Part shown: positions 4,374-20,063 of the stretch, piece by piece
Layout of the letters: every line of letters begins with the position of its first letter
Numbering within the stretch: the first letter of the stretch is position 1
Assembly: GCF_046119375.1 (NCBI RefSeq)
Contig: NW_027362767.1
Location: 424,700,001-424,764,000, forward strand
Reading direction: 5' to 3'
From: Phyllobates terribilis
Lineage: Eukaryota
Length of the DNA stretch: 64,000 nt
The notes under the pieces: model-generated
Databases searched by the model: none
What the model was told of the DNA's origin: nothing
Seen by the model: the letters and a program-made list of their open reading frames with translations, nothing else
Translations under genes and position numbers: made by a program

Positions 4374-7300
4374 TCACAGCGTGCCCATCATCCCCCCTCC
4401 CAGGCTCAGTCTTTCTTGAAGCTTCTTTATGATCTGATCTCTATTCTCTGCATCTTGCAGCAGTTTCTAGAAGACAAGAAAATTAGAGTAAATTGTGAAT
4501 GTGATCTGAGCTGCAGTACCTGAGAATAGCCACTACATGGAGGACGGCGCTGTGCTGTTCTATACACTGTTTACTTTTAGAGATCAGGGAAATCTGAAAT
4601 AATGACTTATTCTAAGGATATTTGTATGTGGTGAGCTCCCCCTAGTGGTGGCTGTATAAATCTGTATGCAATGAGCTCACTCTACAGGTGGGTGTATAAA
4701 TCTCTATGTAGTGAGCTCCCCCTAGTGGTGGCTGTATAAATCTGTATGTAGTGAGCTCCCACTAGTGGTGACAGTATAAATCTGTATGTAGTCACCTCCC
4801 CCTAGTGGTGGCTGTATAAATCTGTATGTAGTGAGCTCCCCCTAGTGGTGGCTGTATAAATCTGTATGTAGTGAGCTCCTCCTAGTGGTGGCTGTATAAA
4901 TCTGGATGAAGCAAGCTCCCTCTAGTTGTGACAGTATAAATACACACGTGGTCAAAACTGTTGGTACCCCTCGTTTAATGAAAGAAAAACCCACAATGGT
5001 CACAGAAATAACTTGAATCTGACAAAAGTAATAATAAATTAAAAATCTATGAAAATGAACAAATGAAAGTCAATCATTGCTTTTCTGCTTCCACAGAATA
5101 AAAAAAAATAAATAAACTGATGAAACAGGCCTGGACAGAAATGATGGTTCTTCTTAACTTAATATTTTGCTGAACAACCTTTTGAGGCAATCACTGCAAT
5201 CAAACGACTCCTGTAACTGTCAATGAGACTTCTGCACCTCTCCACAGGTATTTTGGCCACTCCTCATGAGCAAACTGCTCCAGTTGTCTCATGGTTGAAG
5301 GTTGCCTTTTCCAGACGTCATGTTTCAGCTCTTTCCAAAGATGCTCAATAGGATTTAGGTCAGGGCTCATAGAAGGTCACTTCAGAATAGTCCAATGTTT
5401 TCCTCTTAGCCATTGTTGGGTGTTTTTAGCTGTGTGTTTTGGGTCATAATACTGTTGCAAGACCCATGACCTGCGACTGAGACCACGCTTTCTGACACTG
5501 GGCAGCACATTTCTCTATAGAATCCCTTGATAGTCTTGAGATTTCATTGTACCCTGCACAGATTTAAGACACCCTGTGCCAGATACAGCAGACCAGCCCC
5601 AAAACATAAAAGAGACTCCTCCATGTTTCACAGTAGGGACAGTGTTCTTTTCTTGATATGCTTCATTTTTCCATCTGTGAACATAGATCTGATGTGCCTT
5701 GCCAAAAACTTCCATTTTTGTCTCATCTGTCCATAGGACATTCTCCCAGAAGCTTTGTGGCTTGTGAACATGTAGTTTGGCAAATTCCAGTCTGGCTTTT
5801 TTATGATTTTTTTTTCAACAATGGTGTTCTCCTTGGTCGTCTCCCATGAAGTCCACTTTAGATCAAACAACGACGGATGGTGCGATCTGACACTGATGTT
5901 CCTTGAGCTTGAAGTTCACCTTTAATCTCTTTAGAAGTTTTCCTGGGCTCTTTTGTTACCATTCATATTATCCGTCTCTTTGATTTGGTATCAATTTTCC
6001 TCCTGCGGCCACGTCCAGGGAGGTTGGCTACAGTCCCATGGATCTTAAATTTCTGAATAATATGTGCAGCTGTAGTCACAGGAACATCAAGCTGCTTGGA
6101 GATGGTCTTATAACCTTTACCTTTAACATGCTTGTCTATAAATTTCTTTCTAATCTCCTGAGACAACTCTTTCCTTTGCTTCCTCTGGTCCATGTTGAGT
6201 GTGGTACACACCATGTCACCAAACAGCACAGTGAGTATCTGTAGCCCTATATACAGGCCCACTGACTGATTACAAGATTGTAGACACCTGTGATGCTAAT
6301 TAGTGGACACAACTTGATTTAACATGTCCCTTTTGTCACATTATTTTCAGGGGTACCATCATTTCTGACCAGGCCGATTTCATGAGTTTAATTTTTTTTT
6401 TATTCTGTGGAAGCAGAAAAGCAATGTCTGACTTTCATTTGTTCATTTTCATAGATTTTTAATTTATTATTACTTTTGTCAGATTCAAGTTATTTCTGTG
6501 ACCATTGTGGGTTTTTCTTTCATTAAACGAGGGGTACGAACAATTTTGACCACGTGTGTATGTATGTAGTGAGCTCCCCCTAGTGGTGGTTGTATAAATC
6601 TGTATGCAGTGAGCTCCCTCTAGTGGTGACAGTATAAATATGTATGTAGTGAGGTCTCCCTTGCGGTGGCTGTATAAATCTGTATATAGTTAGCTCCCCC
6701 TAGTGGTGGATGTATAAATCTCCATGTAGTGAGCTCCCCCTAGTGGTGGAGATAAATACGGATTTATCGAAAATGGGAATGGGTGGGGACACAACAACCT
6801 GTAACACCATGGAGGAGGCCGTGGATGAGCTGTTATTTGCGGACATGCTCAGGATCTAGGGTGGTGGGGTCCTCACCTTAGTCGTCCGGTCCTTCTCCCT
6901 CCCTGAGTCTTGTAGTTGCAGCAGTTTGGCGTGGACTTGGTGGCGATCGGCATTATGCCTCCGTCTCTCCTCTTGCACCTCGCCCTCCTTCACCCTCAGC
7001 GCCCCTCGCAGCGTCTTCTGCTCCTGAGCCCCGTCCTGCAGGCGTTTCTTACAATGCCGCAGCTGTTCCTGAAGGTGAAGGACAATGTTATGGCGGATCT
7101 GTATATAGATCACATACAGGCACAACGTAAAGGAAGGAAACACCGCAAAGCCCCCTACAGTCTCCAACCTGAGACTCCTATGTTACCATCTACTGACTTC
7201 CTGCTCAGCTTTTACACAGCAGCCATCTAAACACGCAGACCTGCAGTGTAAAGCATGGTGGAGGCTGAAATAACATTGATTAGGCCTTCCACTTCTGCCA

Positions 7301-19300: not shown

Positions 19301-20063
19301 ATCCGTCGTCTTCTCTTTGGCTGTGCTTCTTCCTCCGAGGGACGGCACACACAGACTCATAATTGGCATCGGAAACTCTCCACGAGGAACAAGAATGACA
19401 CTTCTCGCCCCTGACGCAACGAGAGCAGCCTCTGTGATGGTCGTCCCACCAGCTCTCATGCTCCCACATTGAGCGGTCATGGTCCAGAAGATTTTGGTAA
19501 GATTTTGAAGGAGTTCCCGAAGACAAAGAACCCAAAGAGCCATGGAAGGACCCCGGGCGGTCAGTAAAAGGAGATGTTGGACAGGAATTTTGGTATCCAG
19601 GAGAAAGGGAATTATTCCGAGACTTAGCATAACCCGGAGACCTGAGATCATTATAAGAACCCCGATACCCATAGGTATTACGGTCTTGCTGATGCCCAAG
19701 GTACTCCGGTACTGGAAGTCCCCAGGCCCTGGCGTGAATAGTACGTAGGGTAAACGAAAGCTTCTCCTTCTCCTTCACCAGGCGGATAGACCTTTGCTCA
19801 TACAGCTCCCGCATACGAGACAACACCTGGTCATAACGGTGGTAGACATTCAGTGAGTGGCAGCACTTTCCGCAGATGAACTCGGCATCTTCCGGCCTTC
19901 CTTTCCCTTTTCCCGGTTTGGAGGATGACCCAGGTGGATTGCGGAGAACTGGGGTTCCTACTACATGGGAAAATAAGGCCGGGAGAGATCCGGAGCCCCC
20001 GAAGAGCCACTTACGACGTGATCCACGAAGTTGTGAGGAACAGAGACGGCAAAGATCAGACAT
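4374..20063 (-). CDS. Myomegalin (PDE4DIP short/MMG8-SMYLE type)/CDK5RAP2-like coiled-coil protein, 9 coding exons, ~754 aa
   Basis: Coding exons read by hand, all GT-AG and phase 0: 20063-18903 (MSDLCRLC...CGKC...SKIP...GPE, 387 aa), 16904-16797, 14825-14751, 12622-12518, 11375-11238, 10725-10546, 10455-10243, 7068-6877, 4466-4374 (stop TGA). The N-terminus ([17 protein letters not shown]...AEFICGKC...[15 protein letters not shown]) resembles the recalled PDE4DIP MMG8 N-terminus (CRICARELCGNQRRWIF...AEFACSKC...IYRFDTVIARIEAL). The 46-aa and 60-aa exons match recalled PDE4DIP coiled-coil segments in length and pattern. Divergence suggests a paralog, not PDE4DIP itself. Small missed exons cannot be excluded. 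Confidence 0.85.
4620..6752. repeat. 40-bp minisatellite split by a Tc1 insertion (4620-4942 and 6559-6752)
   Basis: Unit tgtagtgagctccccctagtggtggctgtataaatctgta. Confidence 0.9.
4943..6558 (-). mobile_element. Tc1/mariner DNA transposon, defective
   Basis: TA-flanked ~200-bp inverted repeats (cacacgtggtcaaaa...ttttgaccacgtgtg). Fragmented transposase: [16 protein letters not shown]..., [21 protein letters not shown]. Inserted into a 40-bp minisatellite. Confidence 0.93.
7701..10217. repeat. ~36-bp minisatellite, ~70 copies
   Basis: Unit gcagtattatagtagttatattcttgtacataggg(g/a), with 33-37-bp variants. Confidence 0.97.
10930..11170. repeat. 30-bp minisatellite, ~8 copies
   Basis: Unit gaggagccacatggttatagccctgcccct. 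Confidence 0.93.
11570..12275. repeat. 86-bp tandem repeat, ~8 copies
   Basis: Unit agtaatgtaatgtatgtacacagtgactgcaccagcagaatagtgagtgcagctctggagtataatacaggatgtaactcaggatc. Confidence 0.95.
12683..14720. mobile_element. Non-autonomous hAT (Charlie-type) element carrying a minisatellite and a hairpin
   Basis: TIRs caggggtctcaaac...gtttgagacccctg with an exact 8-bp TSD ccctaaag (12675-82 and 14721-28). Internal 31-32-bp repeat at ~13060-14230 and a ~140-bp-arm inverted repeat at ~14338-14650. Confidence 0.9.
14900..15687. mobile_element. T2/Kolobok-type MITE
   Basis: TTAA flanks at 14896-99 and 15688-91, termini aggggcggtc and gaccacctct, internal (gagcgt)-type repeats at ~15165-15450. Confidence 0.65.
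15810..16130. mobile_element. Hairpin MITE-like inverted repeat
   Basis: Arms ~15810-15940 and ~15998-16130 are imperfect reverse complements (ctctaatcttccatcttctga...tcagaagaaggaagattagag). Confidence 0.6.
16205..16700. repeat. 93-bp tandem repeat, ~5 copies
   Basis: Unit tgtacaatgactgataacacctctatatacagtagataacacaggatccaccattcacaatagctgatgtcacagctcacctcctcctcctcc. Confidence 0.95.

What the first reader, a model, noticed from the sequence alone, without database searches (positions are those of the whole stretch)
4374..20063. A stand-alone short-myomegalin (SMYLE/MMG8-like) gene: probable third member of the PDE4DIP/CDK5RAP2 family
Seen: a 387-aa first coding exon followed by eight phase-0 coiled-coil exons and a stop at ~754 aa. 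No CM1 or C-terminal CM2-like segment is visible, and PPT2's 3' end lies only ~2.3 kb upstream of the putative first exon, leaving little room for a CM1-coding start. Established (recalled): in mammals this architecture arises only as an alternative isoform of PDE4DIP that binds AKAP9 and EB proteins at the Golgi/centrosome. Inference: a separate, largely uncharacterised ohnolog dedicated to the short form, retained in amphibians and lost in mammals.
Basis: partly seen in the sequence, partly recalled or inferred. Interest (0 to 1): 0.7.

Follow-up and report, generated by a model that had tools for sequence, protein, structure and literature searches.

The report
Stand-alone short myomegalin-like gene in frog
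This poison-frog gene beside PPT2 is a real, conserved, separate gene for a "short myomegalin" type microtubule-organising scaffold: an unstudied third relative of PDE4DIP and CDK5RAP2, found from sharks to reptiles (including zebrafish and Xenopus) but not found in mammals.

Summary
On the minus strand there is a 387-codon first coding exon (20063-18903) and eight phase-0 exons, ending at a stop at 4376-4374 (754 aa). The database protein of Phyllobates terribilis (729 aa, cassette exon skipped) matches at 100%.

The gene is the frog ortholog of zebrafish si:ch73-95l15.5. That family of 650-790 aa proteins occurs in sharks, rays, chimaera, ray-finned fishes, coelacanth, lungfish, caecilians, frogs, squamates and turtles. 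No mammal, bird or crocodilian member was found.

A maximum-likelihood tree gives three separate jawed-vertebrate clades: this family 99/99, PDE4DIP 100/100, CDK5RAP2 98/96. A frog and a caecilian carry both this gene and a true myomegalin. The PPT2-to-gene tandem is shared with zebrafish, and an SLC44A4-like gene lies downstream in Xenopus and python. Both neighbours are MHC class III genes.

mRNA contigs from another frog and from zebrafish show a non-coding 5' exon with in-frame stops, so there is no CM1.

The protein has a ZAD-fold N-terminus, the SMYLE_N domain, a conserved SxIP motif (SKIP) and coiled coils. dN/dS is 0.22. EB and AKAP9 binding are inferred, not shown. I found no paper on it.

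The parts
20479..20627 (-). Non-coding 5' UTR exon (5' limit approximate). It holds a 3-codon uORF (ATG TGG GCA TAG, 20567-20556). When spliced to 20065 it gives an in-frame TAG 11 codons before the start codon.
   Evidence: The 5' UTR of frog mRNA contig L006 aligns to 20601-20484 at 78% identity, E 8e-22. The GT donor is at 20478/20477. L006's own 5' UTR has three in-frame stops.
18903..20065 (-). Large exon holding the start codon (ATG at 20063) and 387 codons. It encodes the ZAD-like module, a Ser-rich linker, the SMYLE_N core and the SxIP motif.
   Evidence: Acceptor AG is at 20067/20066 and donor GT at 18902/18901. The mRNA contig L006 aligns to 20067-18898.
19719..20063 (-). ZAD-fold N-terminus (aa 1-115). 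It has four invariant Cys (C5, C8, C64, C67) followed by a long helix (aa 65-114).
   Evidence: The Cys are invariant across 45 sequences of all three paralog clades. The AlphaFold2 model has pLDDT 84.9. The top 11 Foldseek PDB hits are all ZAD crystal structures; 1pzw gives TM 0.79 and rmsd 2.2 A. Pfam zf-AD is only weak (E 0.008).
19329..19517 (-). SMYLE_N core (aa 183-245). It includes a second Cys cluster (C213, C216, C222, C225, C239) and an RVSD..YESVC..PRR motif.
   Evidence: Pfam PF18615, E 3.5e-12, best stretch aa 183-245. The columns are invariant across frogs and across the whole family.
19026..19037 (-). SxIP motif SKIP (aa 343-346), the predicted EB1/EB3-binding site.
   Evidence: Ile and Pro are invariant in alignments A1 and A4. 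The same motif sits in the same context in the PDE4DIP, CDK5RAP2 and cyclostome proteins. The SRLP motif of the mammalian N-terminal fragment MMG 1-389 binds EB1/EB3 (PMC5626540); its equivalence to this site was not aligned here (no mammalian sequence was used).
16797..16904 (-). Coding exon 2 (36 aa, phase 0).
14751..14825 (-). Coding exon 3 (25 aa). It is a cassette: absent from the annotated 729-aa isoform X2 and present in the 752-755 aa orthologs.
   Evidence: It is present in P0002 and in the length of mRNA contig L006.
12518..12622 (-). Coding exon 4 (35 aa).
11238..11375 (-). Coding exon 5 (46 aa).
10546..10725 (-). Coding exon 6 (60 aa). Together with exon 7 it is the most constrained coiled-coil block.
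   Evidence: dN/dS is 0.08.
10243..10455 (-). Coding exon 7 (71 aa).
   Evidence: dN/dS is 0.11.
6877..7068 (-). Coding exon 8 (64 aa).
4373..4466 (-). Coding exon 9 (30 aa plus TGA at 4376-4374). The exon ends one base after the stop, and a GT donor follows at 4372/4371.
   Evidence: The C-terminal ending (G-M-x-x-T-L) is shared from sharks to frogs.
2716..3580 (-). 3' UTR exon (acceptor AG at 3582/3581). Homology to the other frog's mRNA runs at least to 2716. The true 3' end is unknown; the first AATAAA on this strand is at 1815.
   Evidence: The 3' UTR of L006 aligns colinearly to 3582-3500, 3424-3391, 3247-3180, 3031-2942 and 2745-2716.
24139..30305 (-). Upstream neighbour PPT2, same strand. 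Its first coding exon lies within 30015-30305, and its last coding exon is 24282-24142 with the stop at 24141-24139.
   Evidence: ORF translations. The last exon is 56% identical to the Palm_thioest gene directly upstream of the zebrafish ortholog.

Best explanation
This is the Phyllobates terribilis ortholog of an old vertebrate gene known only as zebrafish si:ch73-95l15.5 and as 'uncharacterized LOC' entries elsewhere. It is a third paralog of PDE4DIP (myomegalin) and CDK5RAP2.

As a separate gene, it encodes only the module that mammals produce as the MMG8/SMYLE isoform of PDE4DIP. That module has four parts:
- a ZAD-fold zinc module, probably for dimerisation;
- the SMYLE_N region;
- an SxIP motif;
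- about 370 aa of coiled coil.
The protein is colinear with the first about 900 residues of the ZAD-start forms of PDE4DIP and CDK5RAP2. It has no CM1 (gamma-tubulin complex activating) start and no long C-terminal part.

Shown: the gene structure, orthology, three-clade phylogeny, conserved linkage to PPT2 and SLC44A4, purifying selection, and transcription in a related frog and in zebrafish.

Inferred (about 50%): the protein is a dimeric scaffold docked at the Golgi and/or centrosome, most plausibly through AKAP9 as for MMG8 residues 1-389. There it would recruit EB1/EB3 through SKIP and so tether or stabilise microtubules.

Inferred (about 65%): it is the MHC-paralogon ohnolog of the family and was lost in the mammalian lineage.
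For: Exon chain and identity: (100% match to P0001).

Domains: SMYLE_N above the Pfam cut-off. ZAD fold, and Pfam zf-AD is precomputed on the reptile orthologs.

Distribution: about 28 frogs. Caecilian, coelacanth, lungfish, sharks, ray, chimaera, bichir, zebrafish, turtle, gecko and snake. About 35 squamates and turtles.

Colinear over the whole length from shark to frog.

Tree: S clade 99/99, PDE4DIP 100/100, CDK5RAP2 98/96. Each clade holds cartilaginous and bony fishes (the quick tree agrees). True myomegalin coexists with the short gene in Mixophyes and in Microcaecilia.

The S-family profile aligns colinearly with residues 1 to about 930 of ZAD-start PDE4DIP and CDK5RAP2.

Synteny: PPT2 lies upstream on the same strand here and in zebrafish. 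A choline-transporter (SLC44A4-like) gene lies downstream in X. laevis chromosome 8S and in python.

The human MHC 6p21.3, 9q33-q34, 1q21-q25 and 19p13 are paralogous regions (PMC1309616). PDE4DIP at 1q21 and CDK5RAP2 at 9q33 are recalled map positions.

mRNA contigs with an uninterrupted reading frame and a stop-bearing 5' UTR. dN/dS 0.22.

The SxIP motif is conserved in all clades. [quoted passage not shown]
Against: No binding or localisation data exist for any member of the family.

The frog lineage has a long stem branch (1.39 changes per column) and a Ser-rich insertion of about 50 aa after the ZAD. Frog proteins may therefore have drifted in function.

In caecilian, coelacanth and bichir the Ser of SxIP is Cys.

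Cyclostome sequences are placed unstably: with the short family and outside it. The timing relative to the two genome duplications is therefore open.

Absence in mammals, birds and crocodilians rests on predicted-protein databases only. One unnamed transcript (P0087), sister to turtles, may come from a lineage I could not name.
Confidence: 0.78

Rival explanations
1. Ancient small-scale duplication, not whole-genome duplication. On this reading a tandem or segmental copy of only the SMYLE-start part of an ancestral PDE4DIP/CDK5RAP2-like gene arose before jawed vertebrates diverged and landed by chance next to PPT2. Identity and function would be as in the best explanation; only the origin differs.
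For: The short gene holds just the 5' internal-promoter part of the long genes, as a partial segmental copy would. Cyclostome short proteins (lamprey 910 aa, hagfish 723 aa) exist, but their placement is unstable. No fourth (19p13-type) member was seen.
Against: The gene lies among MHC class III genes (PPT2, SLC44A4-like). PDE4DIP (1q21) and CDK5RAP2 (9q33) lie in the two classical MHC-paralogous regions (PMC1309616; gene positions recalled), which is what 2R predicts. The multi-intron structure with a large first coding exon and phase-0 coiled-coil exons is kept from chimaera to frog.
Confidence: 0.2
2. Same gene family, different job. On this reading the short protein no longer works as an EB/AKAP9 scaffold. 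It might be a coiled-coil protein at another site, or a ZAD-mediated partner or dominant regulator of long PDE4DIP or CDK5RAP2 through hetero-dimerisation.
For: Nothing is known experimentally. The Ser of SxIP is replaced by Cys in three lineages. The frog N-terminal region is strongly diverged. The strongest constraint lies in coiled-coil exons 6-7 (dN/dS about 0.1), whose partner is unknown. The ending G-M-K-x-T-L is conserved and has no known role.
Against: The ZAD Cys, the SMYLE_N Cys cluster and the x-[KR]-I-P-V context are conserved across about 450 million years and across all three paralogs. The 387-aa exon corresponds in extent to the mammalian fragment MMG 1-389, which suffices for AKAP450 and EB binding (PMC5626540).
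Confidence: 0.25
3. It is the frog's PDE4DIP ortholog, or a truncated gene model of it, with the CM1 and C-terminal exons simply missed.
For: It has the SMYLE_N domain and an N-terminus like that of short myomegalin. An acceptor site directly before the ATG showed that there is an upstream exon.
Against: The upstream exon is non-coding and carries in-frame stops. The stop at 754 aa is shared by more than 60 species. Frogs and caecilians have a separate myomegalin. The tree separates the clades at 99-100% support. The flanking genes are PPT2 and SLC44A4-like.
Confidence: 0.02
4. It is a recent amphibian-specific duplicate or retrocopy of the PDE4DIP short isoform, or a decaying pseudogene.
For: The word-based searches at first returned only frogs.
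Against: The exhaustive profile search found orthologs from sharks to reptiles. The gene has ten introns (eight of them in the coding region). The reading frame is intact with dN/dS 0.22. Spliced mRNA contigs exist.
Confidence: 0.01

Closest known systems
PDE4DIP (myomegalin) isoform MMG8 / SMYLE (1116 aa in human)
   Same: It shares the N-terminal CxxC...CxxC ZAD-like module, the SMYLE_N domain, the SxIP-type motif in the same context, the coiled coils that follow, and the lack of CM1. The frog protein is colinear with the first about 900 residues of ZAD-start myomegalins. The 387-aa exon matches the extent of the functional fragment MMG 1-389 (PMC5626540).
   Different: It is a separate gene at a different locus (beside PPT2), not an isoform. 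It is shorter (754 against 1116 aa) and falls in a different clade. About 30-35% identity in the N-terminal 125 residues. Frogs carry a Ser-rich insertion. No experimental data exist.
CDK5RAP2
   Same: It is a paralog. In catshark and ray-finned fishes, CDK5RAP2-side proteins also start with the same ZAD / SMYLE_N / SxIP module (P0152, P0103, P0096).
   Different: CDK5RAP2 is a protein of 1900-2900 aa with CM1 and CM2. The frog gene has neither. The clades are separate (98/96 against 99/99).
Zebrafish si:ch73-95l15.5 and its 'uncharacterized LOC' orthologs (for example X. tropicalis LOC100488374)
   Same: It is the ortholog: same clade, same length class, colinear alignment, same ending, and the same PPT2-upstream tandem.
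   Different: Teleost and bichir proteins carry an extra Ser-rich insert inside the ZAD region. The frog proteins are the most diverged branch. No paper in the searchable library mentions the gene.
ZAD (zinc-finger-associated domain) of insect C2H2 zinc-finger proteins (Grauzone 1pzw, Pita 7pok, M1BP 7po9) and vertebrate ZNF276 (7ppp)
   Same: It has the same four-Cys zinc-binding fold followed by a long helix. These are the only significant structural neighbours of the model. ZADs are dimerisation modules (established for Grauzone and others).
   Different: Here the ZAD heads a cytoskeletal coiled-coil scaffold, not a DNA-binding zinc-finger array. Sequence identity is about 20%, and Pfam zf-AD is below its cut-off on the frog protein.

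Membership tests
[quoted passage not shown] | Pfam SMYLE_N domain (PF18615) near the N-terminus | tested here: met
   E 3.5e-12, 47.1 bits against a cut-off of 25 on the exon-1 translation. The domain is also found on P0001, P0002, P0028 and P0022.
[quoted passage not shown] | Protein starts with the CxxC...CxxC module directly, with no CM1 (Cnn_1N) segment | tested here: met
   No Cnn_1N hit. No CM1-like core in any frame of the window (motif recalled from memory). The 5' UTR exon has an in-frame TAG. The related frog and zebrafish mRNAs have in-frame stops upstream of the ATG.
[quoted passage not shown] | SxIP-type EB-binding motif in the N-terminal region | tested here: met
   SKIP at aa 343-346, with Ile and Pro invariant. 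ZAD-start PDE4DIP and CDK5RAP2 proteins carry S-[KR]-[IL]-P at the same place and in the same context.
[quoted passage not shown] | Binds EB1/EB3 and AKAP9 and localises to the cis-Golgi or centrosome | not testable with these tools
   Known only for the mammalian isoform (PMC5626540, PMC13678657). It needs pull-downs and imaging.
[quoted passage not shown] | Lacks the long C-terminal (PDE4D-binding / CM2-like) part | tested here: met
   The stop at 754 aa is shared by orthologs. The S profile covers only residues 1 to about 930 of the long paralogs.
PDE4DIP orthologs | Falls inside the PDE4DIP clade and is the species' only such gene | tested here: not met
   The clades are separate (99/99 against 100/100). 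Mixophyes and Microcaecilia have both genes.
2R ohnolog of PDE4DIP and CDK5RAP2 | Its own clade holds both cartilaginous and bony vertebrates, so the duplication predates crown jawed vertebrates | tested here: met
2R ohnolog of PDE4DIP and CDK5RAP2 | Lies in a chromosome region paralogous to those of PDE4DIP and CDK5RAP2 | tested here: inconclusive
   MHC class III neighbours (PPT2, SLC44A4-like) were shown here. Paralogy of 6p21.3, 9q33-34 and 1q21-25 comes from PMC1309616. The positions of PDE4DIP (1q21) and CDK5RAP2 (9q33) are recalled and were not checked in a frog or outgroup genome.
2R ohnolog of PDE4DIP and CDK5RAP2 | Duplication timed to the vertebrate genome duplications (relation to cyclostome and invertebrate genes) | tested here: inconclusive
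   Lamprey and hagfish short proteins join the S side in the quick tree but not in the careful tree (91/76). No invertebrate outgroup was found.
ZAD domain | Four zinc-binding Cys in two CxxC pairs, with the ZAD fold | tested here: met
   C5, C8, C64 and C67 are invariant in 45 sequences. The model has pLDDT 84.9. The top 11 PDB matches are all ZAD structures, though Foldseek E-values are only 0.013-0.4. Pfam zf-AD scores E 0.008, below its cut-off, on the frog protein, but is listed for the reptile orthologs.
ZAD domain | Zinc binding and homodimerisation | not testable with these tools
   Needs biochemistry.

The most novel reading that the evidence does not exclude
The ancestral vertebrate centrosomin-family gene already had two starts: a CM1 start and a ZAD/SMYLE start. 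After the two genome duplications, three copies survived. PDE4DIP and (in fishes) CDK5RAP2 kept both starts. The MHC-region copy was cut down to a dedicated stand-alone SMYLE gene. Mammals later lost that gene, leaving the PDE4DIP MMG8/SMYLE isoform as the only carrier of the function. Zebrafish, Xenopus and reptiles would then have an unrecognised, genetically separable EB- and AKAP9-linked microtubule tether. It could mask or modify pde4dip and cdk5rap2 loss-of-function phenotypes in these model organisms.
Probability: 0.45. Interest if true: 0.65.

Novelty: new member of a known kind. Interest (0 to 1): 0.55.

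Why it matters
PDE4DIP and CDK5RAP2 are treated as a two-member family, and the two genes are linked to microcephaly, cardiac disease and cancer. Their isoform biology (CM1 forms against EB-binding forms) is hard to dissect, because all forms come from one locus.

A third member encodes only the EB-binding short form, and it is present in zebrafish and Xenopus. That has three consequences:
1. It gives a natural separation-of-function allele for studying the SMYLE module on its own.
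2. It warns that knockouts of pde4dip or cdk5rap2 in fish and frog may be buffered by this gene.
3. It adds a non-immune gene to the set of MHC-region ohnologs lost in mammals, alongside the CRAT-like gene on this same window and the extra CCN gene that the scan noted elsewhere in this genome.

It is also a clear example of a mammalian alternative isoform that exists as a separate gene in other vertebrates.

Tried and rejected

I disclose three local steps that ran over spans containing those places:
- a poly(A)-signal regex, which listed one hit at 21986 that I do not use;
- a six-frame motif regex;
- a local BLAST with the whole window as subject.
From then on, the places were masked with N.

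The runs holding exon 1 are only guessed to be RNA, so I do not count them as expression evidence.

The two word-based protein searches with frog queries returned frogs only. That was a sensitivity limit, not biology, as the exhaustive search showed.

The look-up of encoding contigs had no record for P0028 or P0001 and gave no DNA for Bombina.

The first AlphaFold job, with 21 frog sequences only, was poor in the zinc region (pLDDT 66) and was not used for fold search.

A global hmmalign of all hits lost one of the two domains in many rows, so I used MAFFT through treekit instead.

tblastx of window 1-4374 against the X. laevis locus found no SLC44A4-like exon in that small flank.

Paper searches found nothing for LOC100488374, PF18615/SMYLE_N, si:ch73-95l15.5 or the SRA run numbers. 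No supplement was held for the paralogon paper.

I used exon references and the databases' own proteins instead.

Full report
WHAT IS THERE

The feature is a minus-strand gene. The large exon reads ATG at 20063 through 387 codons to a GT donor at 18902/18901. A word-based protein search with that exon returned a 100%-identical database protein, 'uncharacterized protein isoform X2' of Phyllobates terribilis (P0001, 729 aa). It also returned about 28 frog orthologs of 741-760 aa.

I mapped P0001 and the Ranitomeya ortholog onto the window by tblastn, read the splice sites, and matched each exon translation separately against P0001. This gives eight further coding exons, all phase 0:
- 16904-16797
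- 14825-14751
- 12622-12518
- 11375-11238
- 10725-10546
- 10455-10243
- 7068-6877
- 4466-4374

The sum is 754 aa. The 25-aa exon 14825-14751 is the one skipped in the annotated 729-aa isoform.

TRANSCRIPT EVIDENCE AND TRUE GENE LIMITS

I could not lay reads from this species (see the compliance section). However, the protein collection holds Logan transcript contigs. L006 (3774 nt, run SRR5149393) comes from another frog and is about 79% identical in exon 1. It carries an uninterrupted 752-codon frame at 154-2412. Aligned to the window, it breaks exactly at the predicted exon borders.

Its 5' UTR aligns to 20601-20484 (78% identity, E 8e-22). A GT donor lies at 20478/20477, and the acceptor AG at 20067/20066 sits directly before the start codon. 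So there is a non-coding first exon at about 20627-20479.
- In the window, this exon spliced to 20065 gives an in-frame TAG 11 codons before the ATG.
- L006 has three in-frame stops in its own 5' UTR.
- The zebrafish mRNA contig L004 has in-frame stops in its 335-nt 5' UTR.

The L006 3' UTR continues at 3582 and below. The exon with the stop ends one base after TGA, followed by GTGAGC, and an acceptor lies at 3582/3581. There is therefore a 3' UTR intron (4372-3581), and the last exon reaches at least 2716.

No CM1 is present:
- Pfam finds only SMYLE_N plus a weak zf-AD on the full proteins.
- None of the 31 open stretches between the ATG and PPT2's stop looks like a coiled coil (read by eye only).

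PPT2 lies upstream on the same strand. Its first coding exon is within 30015-30305 and its stop is at 24141-24139. The end of PPT2's 3' UTR is unknown.

WHO ELSE HAS IT

The word searches reached only frogs. Because the claim rests on distribution, I ran the exhaustive profile search with the frog N-terminal alignment. It gave 85 representative proteins with E no worse than 1e-3. Looking up their names sorts them into three sets.

1. Proteins of 650-790 aa that start with the same module:
   - Microcaecilia
   - Latimeria
   - Protopterus
   - Mustelus, Chiloscyllium and Rhincodon
   - Narcine
   - Callorhinchus
   - Polypterus and Erpetoichthys
   - Danio (si:ch73-95l15.5)
   - Chrysemys
   - Heteronotia
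   - Pantherophis
   - also lamprey (906-910 aa) and hagfish (717-723 aa)

2. Myomegalins of 1850-2600 aa with their own such start: Microcaecilia, the frog Mixophyes, Ambystoma, Scyliorhinus and Anolis.

3. CDK5RAP2 of Scyliorhinus torazame (2823-2869 aa), plus a ray-finned-fish group with a related start.

A third word search with a non-frog alignment added about 35 squamates and turtles. It returned no bird, crocodilian or mammal. Each of the 70 other hits examined (68 of the 85 representatives plus two proteins) has a named nearest relative. Every short-family one is closest to a fish, shark or reptile sequence. One unnamed transcript, P0087 from run SRR22107229, is sister to turtles.

RELATIONSHIP

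A careful maximum-likelihood tree was built from 50 N-terminal regions and 423 columns, with IQ-TREE under LG+C20 (PMSF). It puts the jawed-vertebrate short family on one side of a branch with support 99/99. The PDE4DIP clade has 100/100 and the CDK5RAP2-side clade 98/96. Each clade holds both cartilaginous and bony vertebrates, so all three genes predate crown jawed vertebrates.

The three cyclostome rows are unstable. The short lamprey and hagfish proteins sit on the short-family side in the quick tree, but all three group together outside it in the careful tree (91/76).

Mixophyes has both P0015 (short gene) and P0049 (myomegalin). Microcaecilia has both P0030/P0113 and P0045. This rules out the reading that the short gene is the PDE4DIP ortholog.

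The family is colinear over its whole length from shark to frog, down to a shared ending G-M-K-x-T-L. Its profile aligns colinearly with residues 1 to about 930 of ZAD-start PDE4DIP and CDK5RAP2. The E-values for the coiled-coil half may be helped by composition. The colinearity is the real argument.

SYNTENY

- In zebrafish, the gene directly upstream on the same strand is a Palm_thioest gene. Its last exon is 56% identical to the window's PPT2 last exon. This is the same tandem as in the window.
- In X. laevis (record CM030355.1, chromosome 8S by my reading of the accession series) and in Python, the downstream convergent gene is a choline-transporter-family gene, SLC44A4-like.
- In Callorhinchus, the downstream gene is a TRIM gene.
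- The nine-coding-exon layout is the same in X. laevis, and Callorhinchus and Python show a similar multi-exon layout; the zebrafish mapping was incomplete and splits the region of the large exon in two.

PPT2 and SLC44A4 are MHC class III genes. The human MHC, 9q33-q34, 1q21-q25 and 19p13 are paralogous regions (PMC1309616). From memory, PDE4DIP maps to 1q21 and CDK5RAP2 to 9q33. This fits a 2R ohnolog trio but does not prove it. A small-scale duplication before jawed vertebrates remains possible (about 20%).

Earlier notes of this scan point the same way: a CRAT-like gene on this same window, and an extra CCN gene and an ABO-family gene linked to the MHC class III region elsewhere in this genome. 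I did not test them.

HOW IT PROBABLY WORKS

Residues 1-115 carry four Cys (5, 8, 64, 67) that are invariant in 45 sequences of all three clades. An AlphaFold2 model with that alignment has pLDDT 84.9. Its top 11 Foldseek matches in the PDB are all ZAD crystal structures. Grauzone 1pzw gives TM 0.79 and rmsd 2.2 A, but the E-values are only 0.013-0.4. ZADs are zinc-dependent dimerisation modules (established for the insect proteins).

Residues 183-245 are the SMYLE_N core, with a second conserved Cys cluster.

SKIP at residues 343-346 (window 19037-19026) is a canonical SxIP motif. It sits in a context conserved in all three clades. In mammals, the fragment MMG 1-389 with its SRLP motif binds EB1/EB3 and AKAP450. 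That fragment restores attachment of CAMSAP2-decorated minus ends to the Golgi (PMC5626540; overview in PMC13678657). The 387-aa frog exon corresponds to that fragment.

The coiled-coil exons follow, and exons 6-7 are the most constrained. Against the other frog's mRNA, dN/dS is 0.22 overall and about 0.1 in exons 6-7. This was computed exon by exon and summed as counts.

My reading is a dimeric scaffold that docks at the Golgi or centrosome and recruits EB proteins. Identity and evolution are shown. Binding and localisation are inferred (about 50%).

Cautions:
- the frog stem branch is long (1.39);
- frogs have a Ser-rich insertion of about 50 aa after the ZAD;
- three lineages have Cys in place of the SxIP Ser.

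NOVELTY

The gene is annotated but unnamed and unstudied. Automatic names differ from species to species (rootletin-like, cingulin-like, myosin-J and others). No paper in the searchable library mentions its identifiers. It is a new, uncharacterised member of a known family, not a new kind of system.

Noticed in passing
window 20556-20567 (-): The 5' UTR exon holds a 3-codon upstream ORF (ATG TGG GCA TAG). The other frog's mRNA L006 has the same feature at the same place (ATG GGG GCA TAG). It may be a conserved translational control element.
   Followed up: partly
window 3581-4372 (-): An intron lies inside the 3' UTR and begins one base after the stop codon. The stop is therefore in the penultimate exon, too close to the junction to trigger nonsense-mediated decay.
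   Followed up: partly
P0152/P0103 (Scyliorhinus torazame CDK5RAP2); P0096, P0076, P0156, P0102, P0112 (ray-finned fishes): CDK5RAP2 of a catshark, and a related group in sturgeon, paddlefish and teleosts, also start with the ZAD / SMYLE_N / SxIP module. In several fishes this part is annotated as a separate short protein (316-491 aa). No tetrapod sequence fell in this group. The module was therefore probably ancestral to all three paralogs and lost from tetrapod CDK5RAP2.
   Followed up: partly
frog clade in the tree; window about 19520-19690 (-): Anurans share a very long stem branch (1.39 changes per column). They also share a Ser/Pro/Gly-rich insertion of about 50 aa between the ZAD helix and the SMYLE_N core. 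The cause is either fast change or a shift of function at the base of frogs.
   Followed up: no
L008 (Logan SRR22107229), protein P0087: An unnamed 427-aa transcript product is sister to the turtle orthologs (100/100) but only about 61% identical to them. It could come from a crocodilian, a bird or another archelosaur, so 'absent from archosaurs' is not safe.
   Followed up: partly
window 16797-16904 (-): Coding exon 2 has dN/dS near 1 against the other frog (32 codons only) and is the least conserved part across the family. It is probably a linker.
   Followed up: no
window 7540-10170, 11590-12220, 12890-14500, 16190-16715: Long tandem minisatellite arrays fill several introns of the gene and give spurious long ORFs on both strands. 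One block (8001-10000) has GC 0.31 and GC skew +0.43.
   Followed up: no
window 5515-6262 (-), 26849-27316 (-), 34985-35257 (+), 38483-38863 (+), 47575-48468 (-), 57364-58559 (+); 35757-38699 (-): There are several Tc1/mariner-type transposase remnants, one of them inside the last coding intron of the gene. There is also an intact-looking 980-aa ORF of a non-LTR retrotransposon (endonuclease plus reverse transcriptase) at 35757-38699.
   Followed up: no
window 54602-62037: A carnitine-acetyltransferase-like gene noted earlier by the scan (s1-209065) lies on the same window. Human CRAT is at 9q34 (recalled), in the same MHC-paralogous region as CDK5RAP2. The window may thus hold two MHC-side ohnologs missing from mammals.
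   Followed up: no
I worked beside it and cannot say what it is.
   Followed up: no
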